Source of the DNA: Haliotis rubra
Lineage: Eukaryota
DNA length: 64,000 bases
Direction: 5' to 3'
Assembly: GCF_003918875.1 (NCBI RefSeq)
Contig: NW_025765346.1
Location: 62,001 to 126,000 of the forward strand
Notes under the pieces: generated by a model
Seen by the model: the letters and a program-made list of their open reading frames with translations, nothing else
What the model was told of the DNA's origin: nothing
The model's database searches: none
Program-made: the position numbers and the translations under genes
Part shown: piece by piece, positions 25,632 to 63,436 of the stretch
Numbering within the stretch: position 1 is the first letter of the stretch
Layout: every line of letters begins with the position of its first letter

Positions 25632-28600
25632 ATGTCAGGGTCTGAATCTACTTTCATCCCCAACCACACGACACCGTTGGAGACTCCACCTTCACGACGA
25701 CGTAGTCCCAGATGTTTGTTCTACGTCGTCTTCGCCTTCTCCGTGTCTGTCAATGTGGCTTTAGCTGTGCTTTTCAGCGTACACATGCAAAACCCAGGGT
25801 CATTCCACCAGAAGAAGTCGGACGTATCTTCTGGTCAGCTTGATCATGGGGGTCATGATATGTGTTTTACTTGTGATCAGTTTGGTCCGATGGTCGAATC
25901 ACTGGACACTAACATCATTCGGACCTCCTCGCATCAGCTATGCTGTCAAAGAAGTAATACTGAGGTCAGGGAAGCATTCAAGAAGGTAGGCAGTTGTATC
26001 GAAACACGAATGTTCAGGCTTGTTTCAGAGAGAGTGTGCGAACCTGCATATGTATGTATGTATGTATGTCTGTATGTGTGTGTGTGCGTGTGTACGTACG
26101 TACGTACGTACATATCTATGTATGTGCGCACGATCATGACTGCATGCACATGCGTGTGTGTGTGTGCATGTATGTGAGTATGTATGAATGTATGTATGTG
26201 TGAGTGTGCATGCGTTCGCACGTGCATATATATGTATGTCTGTATGTGTGAGTGTGCGTGCGTGCGCACGTGCATATGTTTGTCTGTCTGTGCGCACGAT
26301 CATGACTGGATGCACATGCTTGTGTGTGTACATGTATGTGTGTATGTATGAATGTATAAATGTGTGAGTGTGCGTGAGTGCACACACGTGCATATGTATG
26401 TATGTGTGAGTGTGCTTGCATGCGCACATGCATATATCTGTCTGTCTGTCTGTACGTACGTATGTATGTACGCACGATAATGCCTGGATGTACATGCGTG
26501 TGGATGTGCATGTATGTGTGTGTGTTTGTGCGTGTGTTTGTATGCATATTCTGTTATTGAATGGCTGTGCTATATATTTCAGATGATCATTGACGAACTC
26601 AACAGACGAATTGCAGGTTTGTTAAGCTATTACATCAACACAGTTCACCGTAGTTACATGAAGCTGTTGTGACATGTGTCCAAGTATAACATGTATTCCT
26701 CAAACAGTTAACACCGTCTTGAGTTCAATACATTAATAAATTAAATATATGTTAACATATTTTGTTGATAGAGGAATACCTAACCCTCGTCACATGTTAT
26801 ATGTCATGATCTGAAACATTTAGCTTGATGTTTCATGAAAAGATTGAATTATTTACATGGATCAGTCATTAATAGACTGAAACATTTAATTCAATGTGCC
26901 ATGATTAGATGAAATCATTGAAGCATGAACCACAAATAGGTTAACAAAATTTCATCGATGTATCGTGGTTAGATTGTTTCATTTGCATCGATTATAATTC
27001 GATTGATTCAGGCAGAACCTATTAAAAGTATCATATGCACATATATGCGCCTTGATTGAGGCACTGGTCATCGTGACGTCATGCTATTGCTGCTACCGAG
27101 ATTGTATATACTCGAAAAACACAACACCGCACACTTTTTCATACGCCTGCAATCGGTCGGAGTATTGCTGCACTGAACCTTGCAAATTTTGGTGTTTAAC
27201 TGTGTTTGATTAATATATCATCTTTAAATGAAACAAATGCCTGGAGTCATCAACTGCAGATTGTTGTGTAATGTGCAATTCTATTTTCAGGGTCGGACCA
27301 GTTGAATTCCCCTGCTATGCTGAATGTCTTCTATGAAACCATTAACATTGGATCCACTGGCGCCCACCTCGACATGGTTCCAATCAAAGGTACAGCCACG
27401 CCGCGGGCCAAGAAGTATTGACACTCGATAAATCTCTCAGACCTTAATTTCGAAGCATAAATTTGAGTCCATGCATTCAAGTATGAGTGGGTGAGGTTTT
27501 ACGCCGTTTTAAGCAAAAATCCGGCACTATCACTGCGGGGGACACCAGAAATGGGCTTCATACCTTCTACTCATGTAAAGAATCGAAGCCCGATTTTCGA
27601 CGTGACAAGCGAACGCTCTAACCACTAGGCATTCCTCCTTTAATTATAAATGCAACTGTATACCACAGGCCCTCGTGTCTTTGCGAAGATTCAAGATTAA
27701 AAAAATGTTTTTGAGAATACCCCCGACTCGAAATGCACACAAATGGATGACGATATATCCGCACAAATGGGGGTGTGGTTGAAGCAAGCCTGCTGATTGG
27801 TCAACACATAAATTCACGGGATTTTTTTCTTTCATCGGCTGCTTAATGTAAGAATAATTTTCGAGCAATGGCTTCTCAAAAGAAAGCATCAGATGTAAAT
27901 GTCTATTCAACACTAACCAGAGGGCTTGCTTCGACCACACCCCCATTTTGTGCGGATATATCGTCATCCATTTGTGTCAAGATCGTTTAGTTGAGAGTCA
28001 AAATCGGGTTTCAATCGACTTGCAAAAATAACAATAAAGAATTGGTGGGTGTTATTAGTGGTGATCTATAGGCCAGTTATCCATACTATTATGTTAAATT
28101 AAGTTTAGATCGATTGCTTTCGATGGTAGCATAGTGATCGGCAAAGCAAAAGGGTAGGGTACACCGAAGTGCTCGGCCTTGTCATAATGTATTGTACTGT
28201 GAAGCATTTCGAGTCAGGGGTCATCTCAATTGTTTATATTTTTTTAACATATTTAATCCTCGCAAAGACACGAGGACCTGCGGTATATACGTGTATGTGT
28301 CGTTAGTTTGTCGGATTTGCATCAGTATGGTCAGATGACATGGACGACAACGTCTTTTGTATGCTGTTATTGTAGTGCACATATTTCTTGAATTTTTTTT
28401 ATATTTTTCACAAATTATTCTTAACAAAGGAAATCCGTATATGTAACTGACACTGTTCTTGTTCTTGTTGTGTCAGAAATAAATGCACTATAAAATTGTT
28501 ACCCATAAAGCCGCATTATAGTAGAATGTAGATTATGTTGTTACCCATAAAGTTGCATTATAGTAGAATGTAGAGGTTGTTACCCATAAAGTCGTAATAT

Positions 28601-29667
28601 AGTAGAATGTAGACGTTGTTACCCATAAAGTCGCATTCTAGTAGAATGTAGATTATATTGTTACCCATAAAGTCGCATTATAGTAGAATGTAGAAGTTGT
28701 TACCCATAAAGTCGCACTTTAGTAGAATGTAGATAATGTTTTTACCCATAAAGTCGCATTATAGTAGAATGTAGAAGTTGTTACCCATAAAGTCGCATTC
28801 TAATAGAATATAGATTATGTTGTTATCCATAAAGTCGCACTATAGTAGAATGTAGATTATGTTGTTACCCATCAAGTCGCATTCTAGTAGAATGTAGAAG
28901 TTGTTACTCATAAAGTCGCATTATAGTAGAATGTAGATCATGTTGTTACCCATAAAGTCGCATTATATTAAAATGTTGAAGTTGCAAGACTCAAAATCGC
29001 ATTATAGTGGAAGCTCTTACCCATAAAGTCGCATTATAATTGAATGTAGAATTTGTTTCCAAAACAGTCGCACTAATAGAATATACAAGTTGTTACCTAT
29101 AAAGTTGCCTGCCTTTGTTGCAGGTCACAACTCCTAAAATGCAGATAGTAGTACTGATCAAATTTAAACCCAACATACTTATCCTTCTACTATGAACATT
29201 ATTTAACGTCTGTGAAAAATACACAACCAATGTCAAAACTATCCAAAGATAGTTCTAACGTCTGGCCAAAGATAGTTCTAACGTCTTTGTATTTTCCAGG
29301 CTCGAAACCAGCATGGACCATCTACGATGACTACAGCATGTCGTATTGTGCCAATGTCGTGTGTGATAACGGAACGATCAGAGTTCCAGGCGCAGGGAGG
29401 TACCTCGTATACTCGCACATAACGCTTAACGTAACCCGAGACACTATCTTCACTCACCGGATACATCGGAACGGGGAAAACACGGTCCCGTTGCTGATAA
29501 GCAAGGTCTCAATCACAGGGACAGATTCCCCTCGGCGAACCTCGTTTCTCTCTGCCGTTTTGAAACTAAAAGAACACGATGTCATCAGCGTATATATACT
29601 GGATGAGTATTATGATCTAGTCGAAAAGAGCAGGTTTTCAAACTACCTGGGTTTATTTAGACTCTGA
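25632..29667 (+). CDS. TNF superfamily ligand 1 (type II membrane protein, 284 aa); exons 25632-25985, 26583-26616, 27291-27389, 29300-29667
   Basis: N-terminal TM helix LFYVVFAFSVSVNVALAVLF; TNF homology domain motifs TGAHL, W, GRYLVYSHITL, TSFLSAVLKL..D.ISV and NYLGLFRL; all introns GT-AG with consistent phases 0/1/1. Confidence 0.9.
26050..26545. repeat. Compound TG/TATG/TGCG microsatellite in intron 1
   Basis: Low-complexity alternating purine-pyrimidine tract. Confidence 0.85.
27737..27977. mobile_element. Foldback element or MITE in intron 3 of TNF ligand 1
   Basis: About 54-bp near-perfect inverted arms (27737-27790, 27923-27977) ACACAAATGGATGACGATATATCCGCACAAA..GGGGGTGTGGTYGAAGCAAGCC. 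Confidence 0.75.
28495..29105. repeat. 39/42-bp minisatellite, about 15 copies, intronic
   Basis: GTTGTTACCCATAAAGTCGCATTATAGTAGAATGTAGA with largely alternating A / TTAT spacers. Confidence 0.9.
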
Positions 29668-29745
29668 GGTTGGGTGAAAAGTGGTTTAACGCCACGTTCA
29701 AGATTACACTGTAAGAGTGCGTCTCTCTCTCTCTCTCCCACCCTC

Positions 29746-29839
<94 letters not shown>

Positions 29840-29840
29840 A

Positions 29841-61917: not shown

Positions 61918-62239
61918 TATATAGGGGAGTACGTTGACTCACACAGGAAATCGTAATACCATGAGTAAGTTCACACTCAATGTGTCAGCACGGTTTAACG
62001 TTCAGATCACTTCCTGGTGTGAAAACATGCATGTATTTTCGAGCTTCTCATGTGAAATATTTAAATACTTAAATACTTAAACCAGTGTGAAACCGGCATA
62101 TTGTGTGTAGCACAACAGATGTCTATTCCATTATTCAGATTAAAAATCGCTGTGTCCATCTTGCTTGACTACGAGGAAAGACCGTTACACAGTGAGTATT
62201 ATGCGGCTATTTTGATCATCATTTTTGGTTTCATCGAGT

Positions 62240-62388
62240 TACGTTTTACGCTTTTAGCAATATTCCAGCAATATCACGGCGGGGGACACCAGAATTTGGC
62301 TTCACTCATTGTACCCATGTGGGGAATCGAACCCGGGTCTTCAGCGTGACGAGCGGACGCTTTAACCACCAGGCTACTTCACCGCCCC
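62240..62388 (-). mobile_element. tRNA-derived SINE family A
   Basis: Reverse complement of the family A consensus. Confidence 0.85.
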
Positions 62389-63049
62389 TGGTGACACCTA
62401 AAATGTTTCCAATTTTCGATTTCGAATTCAAGTAGAAAAGTTTCTTATGCAGTGAACTACGTTTGTAACGAACACGCTTGTTGCGAAATGATGGGTATAA
62501 AGAACTGTTTTGGCTCCGGTCACTTGCTGCATATCTTAACGCAAATACGTATAACGAACTACGTAGAAGAGAATAAATTTTAATATGCCAAATTCGAAAC
62601 GAACAAAATAGAAATGCGAAGATTATCTGAAAAGAGGGAGAGAGCGAGCCATTGGTATGTCGATATTGGGAGTGTTAGAGATCCACATTGGAAGGACCTT
62701 CTGCTGTTCCAAAAACACGGTGTGTTCCCTTTTTCAGTGTTACCGTTTGACAGGCAGAGCACGTGACAGGCCCTGAATAGGAATAGGAAGACGGCGAGTG
62801 GCCACCCACACCCACAACCGTACCATACACGGTATCCGGAGATCAAAGGGTTTCACAGAATCTACACATTCGGAAATTCAAACCCGTATGTTTAGCTTAA
62901 CTGGAGAACGCTGTCACCACTAGACTACCCGTTAAAACCATTGTGCCTGAGATGGAGACGTCCTTGACCCGGCAAAAATATAGCTGTATCTTCCCTGTTG
63001 GATCTAGTAGCAGGAAATACATACAGCAACAGTGACCACGATCTCAGTG

Positions 63050-63436
63050 ATGGCGGACACTTCAGACGACAGTTACCTGACAGTGGAACATCTCCAACCA
63101 CAGAGAGAAACACCGCCGATTCCAAGGAGCTTCTGTTCTGCCAAACGGGTCATCTTTACGACTGTTCTTGTTCTGTCGTTATCTGCCAATGCGGCTTTTC
63201 TATTCTATTTGTACCGTCACCACTTCAAGGACGCCACCAGAGACGATCAGCCAGTGCAGGTGTCACAATCGGAAGTTCATGGAAGCACGTTCTGCACGGA
63301 CTGCACGGACATTGGAGTACATCCGGGCATGCGAAACATTTCTGACCTTGAGGATCTATTGGTGCAAATCACTCCCAACTCGTCTTATCTGTGCTGTCTG
63401 AAGAATGTCCAGGGTCGACAGATGCTCCTGGATCTC
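63050..63436 (+). CDS. Exon 1 of TNF superfamily ligand 4 (gene continues beyond the window)
   Basis: TM helix VIFTTVLVLSLSANAAFLFYLY, CTDCTDIGVHP...LCCLKN and phase-0 donor gtaagt at the same position as ligand 3; the TNF domain itself is not in the window. Confidence 0.8.

What the first reader, a model, noticed from the sequence alone, without database searches (positions are those of the whole stretch)
25858..63436. Conserved CxxCxx(L/F/I)G-x(n)-CC-helix mini-domain in the stalk of all four ligands
Seen: MCFTCDQFG..LCCQR, VCFTCDQLG..FCCQR, VCTDCRSLG..LCCLR and FCTDCTDIG..LCCLK. The four cysteines and the Gly are invariant while the surrounding stalk is barely alignable, and each is followed by an amphipathic helix crossing the first intron. 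Known: vertebrate TRAIL and RANKL stalks have a Cys followed by a helix, but I know of no named domain with this four-Cys pattern. Inference: a disulfide-bonded or metal-binding module that could drive higher-order oligomerisation, control shedding or sense redox state.
Basis: partly seen in the sequence, partly recalled or inferred. Interest (0 to 1): 0.7.

Follow-up and report, generated by a model that had tools for sequence, protein, structure and literature searches.

The report
Four-cysteine stalk domain, abalone TNF ligands
Four neighbouring abalone TNF-type cytokine genes all carry, between the membrane anchor and the receptor-binding head, a small four-cysteine domain with no name and no tested function that scallop genes also keep, so it is a real, old part of mollusc TNF ligands.

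Summary
The window is Haliotis rubra DNA holding four tandem TNF-superfamily ligand genes. Each first exon encodes a cytoplasmic tail, a membrane helix and a stalk with C-x2-C-x(22-29)-C-C, at 25863-25946, 33527-33619, 41807-41908 and 63293-63397.

- **Conservation:** the four cysteines are the only invariant module columns in 21 non-redundant sequences that are otherwise about 21% identical. The set covers four Haliotis species, a scallop and unlabelled environmental contigs. Four tandem scallop ligand genes keep the motif and the same intron, 13 codons after CC. The Gly is only 18/21. One H. rufescens paralog has Tyr at Cys1.
- **No known relative:** I found no Pfam family, no solved-structure relative and no fold match.
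- **Predicted fold:** AlphaFold2, at modest confidence, gives the same topology for both gene subtypes: strand with Cys1, one helical turn with Cys2, a hairpin whose second strand carries CC, then an amphipathic helix across intron 1.
- **Best reading (about 0.5):** an extracellular, disulfide-stapled mini-domain capping a trimerising stalk helix. An interchain cystine knot and a zinc site remain open.
- **Assembly gaps:** both lie between genes 3 and 4 and touch no exon.
- **Gene 2 frameshift:** this is a 1-bp assembly error.
the scan already noted this module on another piece of this genome (s1-325309).

The parts
25632..25985 (+). Gene 1 exon 1: cytoplasmic tail, TM helix (S-x3-N at 25740), stalk, four-Cys module, start of helix
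   Evidence: ORF and GT donor; tblastn to Haliotis orthologs P0005/P0004, 54-65% identity
25863..25946 (+). Gene 1 four-Cys module, CFTC...(22)...CC
26583..26616 (+). Gene 1 exon 2, a 34-nt mini-exon (MIIDELNRRIAG) continuing the helix
   Evidence: AG/GT borders and frame
27291..27389 (+). Gene 1 exon 3 (linker to ..STGAHLDMVPIKG)
   Evidence: tblastn to P0005, 78% identity; splice sites
29300..29667 (+). Gene 1 last exon, TNF homology domain
   Evidence: Pfam PF00229 E 4.6e-7; phase-1 acceptor; the spliced model gives 284 aa without a stop
33269..33658 (+). Gene 2 exon 1 (first 130 aa of RefSeq XP_046559939.1)
   Evidence: transcript contig lies on 33200-33656
33527..33619 (+). Gene 2 four-Cys module, CFTC...(25)...CC
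   Evidence: Cys codons unchanged in the relative's transcript, which has 11 other substitutions in exon 1
35130..35163 (+). Gene 2 exon 2, a 34-nt mini-exon (IVSDEYLRRLTG)
   Evidence: 33 unlaid letters of the transcript contig between exon 1 and exon 3
35585..35676 (+). Gene 2 exon 3. The assembly lacks one G of a G-run behind 35602, which shifts the frame
   Evidence: All four runs laid, including the probable source DNA, have an extra G behind 35602; frames
36733..37121 (+). Gene 2 last exon, TNF homology domain
   Evidence: Pfam PF00229 E 3.6e-13; transcript contig on 36731-37174
41558..41947 (+). Gene 3 exon 1
41807..41908 (+). Gene 3 four-Cys module, CTDC...(28)...CC
42855..42972 (+). 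Gene 3 exon 2 (helix end, linker, ..STGAHLYVDSEALKSG)
43817..44211 (+). Gene 3 last exon, TNF homology domain
   Evidence: Pfam PF00229 E 3.1e-14; the spliced model gives 300 aa
63050..63436 (+). Gene 4 exon 1 (residues 1-129 of RefSeq LOC124268961, P0038); the remaining exons lie beyond the window end
63293..63397 (+). Gene 4 four-Cys module, CTDC...(29)...CC, with two N-x-S sequons in its loop
45388..45546 (.). Assembly gap, intergenic (between gene 3 and gene 4)
54557..54706 (.). Assembly gap, intergenic, just 3' of a non-LTR retrotransposon

Best explanation
The segment is a family-specific extracellular stalk domain of mollusc TNF-superfamily ligands. Each protein is a type II membrane protein: a basic N-terminal tail, one TM helix, about 30-40 poorly conserved residues, then a 28-35-residue module C-x2-C-x(22-29)-C-C. 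Four to five residues later comes a conserved amphipathic helix that runs across a fixed phase-0 intron, followed by a linker and the TNF homology domain. The most likely mechanism is that the module folds as a small three-stranded beta unit. Cys1 sits in strand 1, Cys2 in the helical turn that follows, and CC in strand 3. Two intrachain disulfides staple the CxxC element to the CC strand. This rigid cap sits at the membrane-proximal end of the helix, and the three helices of a ligand trimer pack through their conserved hydrophobic stripe. The module would thereby stabilise and register the trimeric stalk and leave the linker after the helix as the exposed segment. Shown here: the presence, position, conservation, exon structure and expression of the module, and the lack of any named relative. 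Inferred: the extracellular location (from topology and sequons), the fold (a modest-confidence prediction), the disulfides, helix bundling and the function.
For: - Conservation: the four Cys are the only invariant module columns in 27 sequences (21 at <80% identity). Mean pairwise identity outside them is 21%.
- Taxonomic spread: an exhaustive profile search of 1.84 billion proteins found 14 cluster representatives, all with the four Cys. H. rubra has eight such paralogs. Four tandem scallop genes keep the module and the same exon end, 13 codons after CC.
- A folded core rather than a linear tag: hydrophobic residues are conserved beside each Cys element and in the middle strand (columns 8, 10, 15, 27, 30/31 and 42 of A4).
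- Predicted fold: AlphaFold2 gives the same order of elements for type A in the full-length protein (E94-96, H97-100, E111-115, E121-125, H131-148; module pLDDT 52-62) and for type B folded alone (E8-11, H12-15, E30-34, E40-44, H48-66; mean pLDDT 67).
- Helix: hydrophobic positions at +7, +10, +11 and +14 after CC are 89-100% conserved, with +15 and +19 at 62-68%.
- Topology: basic residues precede the TM. N-x-S/T sequons lie inside the module loop in gene 4, and just before CC in the scallop protein P0043 and in P0014.
- Cysteine count: four in nearly all members.
- Expression: a spliced transcript contig covers gene 2 exon 1 through the THD exon.
Against:
- The two predictions share much of their alignment, so they are not independent.
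- Only monomers could be folded, so an interchain arrangement was never given a chance.
- CxxC next to a coiled coil, and vicinal CC next to a trimerising segment, are both known interchain-disulfide motifs in other proteins (from general knowledge, not tested here).
- The weak PDB sequence similarities of the CxxC element are to zinc knuckles and are non-significant (E 0.38 and 3.4).
- One H. rufescens paralog has Tyr at Cys1, and two environmental sequences have a fifth Cys.
Confidence: 0.5

Rival explanations
1. Interchain cystine knot. The vicinal CC, and perhaps the CxxC, form disulfides between the three chains at the N-terminal end of a trimeric helical bundle. This would make the ligand a covalent trimer, or link trimers into higher oligomers.
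For: CC sits a fixed 4-5 residues before a helix with a conserved 3-4 spaced hydrophobic stripe. The distance from CC to the exon end is constant at 13 codons in all eight abalone and scallop genes, whereas the CxxC-to-CC spacing varies from 22 to 29. From general knowledge, not tested here: collagen III uses a vicinal CC as an interchain knot, and COMP, thrombospondins and matrilins use Cys pairs beside coiled coils.
Against: The monomer predictions place CxxC and CC in one small sheet. The conserved hydrophobic residues between the two Cys elements suggest a folded unit rather than two separate cross-linking tags. No multimer prediction or biochemistry is available.
Confidence: 0.25
2. Metal site. 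The four thiolates, within one chain or shared on the trimer axis, bind Zn or another metal, as Cys230 does in the TRAIL trimer.
For: The CxxC is followed by a helical turn and a Gly/Pro, which is knuckle-like local geometry. The only sequence similarities in the PDB, though non-significant, are to CxxC zinc motifs of HSV UL32 and ArfGAP1. TNF ligands are known to use a structural Zn (TRAIL; general knowledge).
Against: The module is extracellular, where Cys4 zinc sites are rare. The second ligand pair is a vicinal CC rather than a second CxxC/CxxH knuckle. There is no Pfam zinc-finger match shared by members: single members hit ZZ and RING at E 0.002-0.006, 1 of 27 each.
Confidence: 0.08
3. 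Redox or processing switch. CxxC and the vicinal CC form strained, reducible disulfides, or the module is a docking site for a sheddase or partner. Either would control release of the soluble ligand at the dibasic sites that follow the helix.
For: Type A genes have a conserved RR-x-x-G at the end of the helix, encoded by the 34-nt mini-exon. Several type B members have R-K just before (S/T)GAHLY.
Against: The CxxC dipeptides (FT, TD, LP, VR) are not those of known oxidoreductases. The module is far too small for a thioredoxin fold and no fold match was found. The dibasic sites lack the furin P4 Arg (reading). There are no data on shedding.
Confidence: 0.1
4. Chance or a neutral relic of recent tandem duplication with no constraint of its own.
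For: The four genes are tandem paralogs, so some shared residues are expected.
Against: The rest of the stalk has diverged to about 21% identity while the Cys stay invariant. The motif is also kept in a bivalve with the same intron position. The pattern is absent from 50 shuffles of the window.
Confidence: 0.02

Closest known systems
Vertebrate FasL (TNFSF6) and TL1A (TNFSF15), e.g. PDB 4MSV and 2RJL
   Same: The TNF homology domain of these abalone ligands matches them best (E 1e-17 and about 1e-15). They share the type II membrane-protein layout with a stalk between TM and THD.
   Different: The solved chains hold only the THD. From memory, not tested, these vertebrate stalks have no C-x2-C...CC module. 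RefSeq's 'TNFSF6-like', 'TNFSF11-like' and 'TNFSF15-like' names for Haliotis paralogs are automatic.
TRAIL (TNFSF10) trimer zinc site (Cys230)
   Same: A TNF ligand whose trimer is stabilised through cysteine chemistry (general knowledge).
   Different: It uses one Cys per chain, inside the THD on the threefold axis. Here there are four Cys per chain, in the stalk outside the THD. The TRAIL THD is a weaker match (E 2e-9).
Interchain disulfide motifs beside trimerising segments: the collagen III C-terminal CC knot, and the Cys pairs flanking COMP, thrombospondin and matrilin coiled coils
   Same: A vicinal CC or CxxC lies directly next to a helix or triple helix that oligomerises (general knowledge). 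This is the same sequence logic as CC plus the heptad-like helix here.
   Different: There is no sequence or fold relationship. Whether the bonds here are interchain is unknown.
N-terminal Cys-rich regions of collectins and adiponectin
   Same: Short Cys-bearing segments upstream of a trimerising stalk and a C-terminal globular head of related jelly-roll or lectin type. They set the oligomeric state (general knowledge).
   Different: Those are secreted proteins with collagen stalks. They have different Cys numbers and spacing, and no homology was detected.
Scan note s1-325309 (same genome, another piece)
   Same: It describes the same C-x2-C-x(24-29)-C-C stalk module in neighbouring abalone TNF ligand genes, and its follow-up came to the same 'unnamed, unsolved, untested' reading.
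   Different: It concerns other DNA, probably the 1.24-Mb contig carrying LOC124282362/364/367/369. That is my inference. Its claim of conservation in snails, clams, oysters and a brachiopod was checked here only for a scallop.

Membership tests
TNF superfamily ligand (TNFSF) | C-terminal TNF homology domain (Pfam PF00229) | tested here: met
   Last exons of genes 1-3: E 4.6e-7, 3.6e-13 and 3.1e-14, all above the gathering score. Gene 4's full protein P0038 carries PF00229. The profile matches FasL, TL1A and TNF structures.
TNF superfamily ligand (TNFSF) | Type II membrane topology: N-terminal cytoplasmic tail, single TM helix, extracellular stalk | tested here: met
   A basic cluster lies before a hydrophobic stretch of about 22 residues in all four genes. 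AlphaFold2 gives one long helix at 41-75 in P0021, pLDDT 82-95. There is no signal peptide. No dedicated topology predictor was available.
TNF superfamily ligand (TNFSF) | Homotrimer formation and receptor binding | not testable with these tools
   Only monomer prediction was available.
Any named Pfam domain for the stalk module | Significant match to a curated profile, shared by members | tested here: not met
   The four exon-1 peptides gave nothing better than E 0.03. The 27 module sequences share no family; the best shared hit is 3 members at E 0.08.
Zinc knuckle / zinc ribbon / treble clef | Two metal-ligand pairs, each CxxC or CxxH, on knuckle or helix N-terminus | tested here: not met
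   There is only one CxxC. The second pair is a vicinal CC in a predicted strand. PDB profile hits to zinc motifs are non-significant.
Thioredoxin-like CxxC redox domain | CxxC at the N-terminus of a helix within a thioredoxin fold of about 100 residues | tested here: not met
   The module is 28-35 residues. No fold match was found: Foldseek E >= 0.77, VIA Z <= 3.3.
Interchain cystine knot beside a trimerising helix (collagen III / COMP-type logic) | Cys pair directly adjacent to an oligomerising helix | tested here: met
   CC lies 4-5 residues before a predicted helix of 18-19 residues with conserved hydrophobic positions +7, +10, +11 and +14.
Interchain cystine knot beside a trimerising helix (collagen III / COMP-type logic) | Disulfides run between chains | not testable with these tools
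   This needs non-reducing gels, disulfide mapping or a multimer model.

The most novel reading that the evidence does not exclude
The module is an ancient, undescribed extracellular domain family of lophotrochozoan TNF ligands, dating from before the gastropod-bivalve split and possibly older. It would lock the ligand into a covalent or metal-bridged trimer at the membrane-proximal end of a coiled-coil stalk. That is a different solution to trimer stability and shedding control from any described for vertebrate or insect TNF ligands.
Probability: 0.25. Interest if true: 0.6.

Novelty: new variant of a known kind. Interest (0 to 1): 0.45.

Why it matters
TNF ligands act as trimers, and their stalks decide whether they signal as membrane-bound or shed forms. 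Invertebrate TNF papers that I could read describe only a TM region, a glycosylation site and the TNF domain, and call the rest non-homologous.

A stalk domain with four invariant cysteines, a fixed intron position and a conserved helix is kept in expanded tandem gene families of abalone and scallop. It is a concrete, cheaply testable handle on how mollusc TNF cytokines are assembled and released.

The finding also gives a better signature than the THD alone for annotating this ligand subfamily. Nearly all of these genes are 'uncharacterized protein' in RefSeq, and one RefSeq model is wrong because of an assembly indel.

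Tried and rejected
- **Word-index protein searches.** These used the full-length alignments A2 and A3 and the stalk region of P0003. They returned only Haliotis and one scallop protein, so they cannot define the taxonomic range.
- **ESM Atlas feature searches.** Gene 2 exon 1 and the P0021 module gave no usable hit.
- **Structure searches with the module model.**
  - Foldseek against the PDB gave E >= 0.77.
  - VIA-align against 48,161 chains gave Z <= 3.3, with winged-helix noise only.
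  - The Atlas shape search gave bacterial noise plus one mollusc THD cluster of 140 members at TM 0.53. I treat that as a lead, not proof.
- **Degenerate DNA pattern for CxxCDx(L)G...(D/E)TLY on metagenome contigs.** It found one chance match inside a bacterial ORF.
- **Source organisms of the environmental hits.** I tried to identify the origin of ERZ26168041, ERZ23486243, GCA_900175075.1 and DRR299178 through papers and contig look-ups, without success. P0011 and P0008 turned out to be Haliotis.
- **Homology of the module with vertebrate TRAIL/RANKL stalks.** This could not be tested, because no full-length vertebrate ligand was obtainable through the tools and I did not type sequences from memory.
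- **Gene 2 as a pseudogene.** I rejected this reading because the reads restore the frame.

Full report
**What is in the window**

Each pair lies in an ATG-initiated open frame that encodes, in order:
- a short tail with a basic cluster;
- a hydrophobic helix of about 22 residues;
- a stalk containing C-x2-C ... C-C.

Each frame ends at a GT donor in phase 0. Downstream of three of these first exons are exons that match the TNF homology domain, Pfam PF00229, at E 4.6e-7, 3.6e-13 and 3.1e-14. Gene 2's first exon is identical to the first 130 residues of RefSeq XP_046559939.1 of Haliotis rubra, on a 193-kb contig. The window is therefore blacklip abalone DNA.

**Gene models**

I used 13 Haliotis proteins as tblastn guides and read the frames and splice sites directly.

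| Gene | Exons | Product |
|---|---|---|
| 1 | 25632-25985, 26583-26616, 27291-27389, 29300-29667 | 284 aa |
| 2 | 33269-33658, 35130-35163, 35585-35676, 36733-37121 | frame broken in the assembly (see below) |
| 3 | 41558-41947, 42855-42972, 43817-44211 | 300 aa |
| 4 | 63050-63436, then beyond the window end | 297 aa, RefSeq LOC124268961 (P0038) |

P0038's N-terminus equals the window sequence, and it carries PF00229. Genes 1 and 2 ('type A') have four exons, including a 34-nt mini-exon. Genes 3 and 4 ('type B') have three, by gene 3's model here; gene 4's later exons lie outside the window. All borders are AG/GT.

**The assembly gaps**

The N runs are at 45388-45546 and 54557-54706. Both lie between the stop codon of gene 3 (44211) and the start of gene 4 (63050), and the second lies next to a non-LTR retrotransposon (ORFs at 48607-53998). 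No ligand-like coding sequence was found between the two genes. No reading frame of the finding crosses a gap, so continuity or frame across them does not bear on the motif. Only the g3-g4 distance, and the possibility of an unassembled copy, remain uncertain. I did not try to fill them.

**Gene 2 is intact and expressed**

As assembled, exon 3 of gene 2 is 92 nt long and breaks the frame. This is why the RefSeq model P0001 reads the last exon out of frame and has no THD.

I laid contigs of four public runs on 33200-37200.
- **Extra G:** every run that covers the place, including the DNA run most likely to be the source sample, has one extra G behind 35602, in a G-run. The shift is therefore an assembly error.
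- **Spliced transcript:** a 1151-nt contig from a run that looks like RNA lies on 33200-33656, skips intron 1, and holds 33 letters that fit the mini-exon. It then lies on 35582-35674 and 36731-37174. This is a spliced transcript and it confirms the four-exon model.
- **Cysteine codons:** that contig differs from the window at 11 places in exon 1, none of them in the four cysteine codons.

**Is the motif more than chance or shared ancestry?**

- **Within the window:** among the four exon-1 peptides the only invariant stalk residues are the four Cys, the Gly and one Ser, at 21-41% identity to gene 1. The pattern C-x2-C-x2-[LIVF]-G...CC occurs exactly four times in the six frames of the window and never in 50 shuffles.
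- **Exhaustive search:** a profile of the four peptides, run against 1.84 billion representative proteins, found 14 clusters at E < 1e-3, and every one keeps the four Cys.
- **Wider collection:** cluster look-ups and word searches brought the set to four Haliotis species (rubra, rufescens, asinina, cracherodii), a scallop (Ylistrum balloti) and several unlabelled environmental or low-coverage contigs.
- **Paralogs:** H. rubra alone has eight paralogs with the motif: the four here and LOC124282362/364/367/369 on a 1.24-Mb contig.
- **Module alignment:** 27 sequences were aligned, 21 of them below 80% identity. The four Cys columns are the only invariant ones, mean pairwise identity outside them is 21%, and the CxxC-to-CC spacing is 22-29 residues.
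- **Gly:** it is kept in 18 of 21, so it is not invariant.
- **Exception:** H. rufescens LOC124124804, one of four very recent duplicates, has Tyr in place of Cys1.

**Conservation in a bivalve**

The scallop protein sits in a tandem array of four THD genes. All four first exons encode a TM helix and then C-x2-C...CC, and all end 13 codons after CC. That is exactly the distance seen in all four abalone genes. The module and its intron therefore predate the gastropod-bivalve split.

It claims conservation in snails, clams, oysters and a brachiopod. I verified only the scallop. The Atlas shape search also returned a 140-member mollusc THD cluster at TM 0.53, which I treat as a lead.

**Is it a known domain?**

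- Pfam finds nothing on the exon-1 peptides and nothing shared among the 27 modules.
- A profile search of all PDB sequences gives only non-significant hits, at E 0.38 and 3.4, both on CxxC zinc motifs.
- Foldseek and VIA-align on the module model find nothing (E >= 0.77, Z <= 3.3).
- A 2026 preprint surveying invertebrate TNF ligands never mentions a stalk or a ligand cysteine motif.
- An oyster FasL paper that compares abalone FasL lists only the TM region, a glycosylation site and the TNF domain, and calls the rest barely homologous.

By THD similarity these ligands are nearest to FasL (E 1e-17) and TL1A (E 1e-15), then TNF. TRAIL and RANKL score about 1e-9.

**Anatomy and likely mechanism**

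The basic residues before the TM, and N-x-S/T sequons inside the module loop in gene 4 or just before CC in the scallop protein P0043 and in P0014, place the module outside the cell.

AlphaFold2 gave the same order of elements in two runs:
- **Type A, full-length:** P0021, the H. asinina ortholog of gene 2, gave E94-96 (Cys1), H97-100 (Cys2), E111-115, E121-125 (CC) and H131-148, with module pLDDT 52-62.
- **Type B, module alone:** gene 4 (P0038:74-140) gave E8-11, H12-15, E30-34, E40-44 and H48-66, with mean pLDDT 67.

Hydrophobic residues are conserved next to both Cys elements and in the middle strand. After CC, the positions +7, +10, +11 and +14 are 89-100% hydrophobic.

My best reading (about 0.5) is a small folded unit whose CxxC element is stapled to the CC strand by two disulfides. 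It would cap a helix that packs in the ligand trimer.

The main rival (about 0.25) is an interchain knot. CC directly beside a trimerising helix, at a fixed distance, is the logic of collagen III and COMP-type knots. That comparison rests on general knowledge, and monomer folding cannot exclude it. A zinc site (about 0.08) and a redox or shedding switch (about 0.1) are weaker.

Coordinates of the models were not available, so I could not measure Cys-Cys distances. None of the bonding states is shown.

**Verdict**

- **Observation:** confirmed.
- **Interpretation:** supported on 'real, conserved, unnamed', and open on mechanism.
- **Novelty:** a new variant of a known kind. These are ordinary TNF ligands with an undescribed, conserved stalk domain.
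- **Earlier sighting:** the scan has already seen the same domain on other DNA of this genome.
- **Interest:** moderate. It is a cheap, well-defined target for biochemistry and a better annotation signature for mollusc TNF ligands.

Noticed in passing
window 35585-35676 (place 35602): The assembly lacks one G of a G-run in exon 3 of gene 2. All four public runs laid there, DNA and transcript-like, have the extra G. RefSeq model XP_046559939.1 (P0001, 266 aa) is therefore out of frame in its C-terminal half and lacks the TNF domain.
   Followed up: yes
window 25740, 33398, 41687, 63176 (TM helices); also L006: The TM helix of every ligand has a polar S-x3-N motif. In the 23-sequence alignment Ser is invariant and Asn is kept in at least 90%. 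The four scallop genes keep [S/N]-x3-N. A buried Asn in a TM helix is a classic driver of helix association, so the anchor may also help trimerise, or it may be a protease or partner site.
   Followed up: partly
window 26583-26616 and 35130-35163: Type A genes have a 34-nt mini-exon that encodes the end of the stalk helix and a conserved RR-x-x-G. Type B genes lack this extra intron.
   Followed up: partly
window 48607-53998 (+): A run of long ORFs looks like a non-LTR retrotransposon (endonuclease-like ORF, reverse transcriptase with a YADD motif). It lies between genes 3 and 4 and is followed by the second assembly gap.
   Followed up: no
window 33736-33875, 35344-35432, 36282-36720: Stretches in the introns of gene 2 have enormous summed depth in all runs and many false joints. 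These are high-copy repeats. The loose-end consensus (..GGTTCGATTCCCCACATGG) looks like a tRNA-derived SINE head.
   Followed up: no
L001 6323-7016 (environmental contig, ERZ26168041): In an unidentified organism's ligand gene, the 3' end of exon 1 (CGHRICC, helix start and splice donor) is tandemly repeated about five times with a period of 111-129 bp. A THD ORF follows about 1 kb downstream.
   Followed up: partly
P0023 / P0031 / P0036 (H. rufescens LOC124124804): This is the only family member seen with a cysteine lost, Cys1 to Tyr. It is one of four very recent tandem duplicates of the gene 2 ortholog. It could be a natural mutant, a decaying copy or a sequencing error.
   Followed up: no
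L006 2362-30161 (Ylistrum balloti, JAUZWB010000092.1): Four tandem TNF ligand genes in a scallop all carry the TM motif, the four-Cys module and an exon end 13 codons after CC. This mirrors the abalone array.
   Followed up: yes
window 25946-26547: Intron 1 of gene 1 begins with a long imperfect (TG/CA)-rich repeat that yields spurious His/Thr/Cys-rich ORFs on both strands.
   Followed up: no
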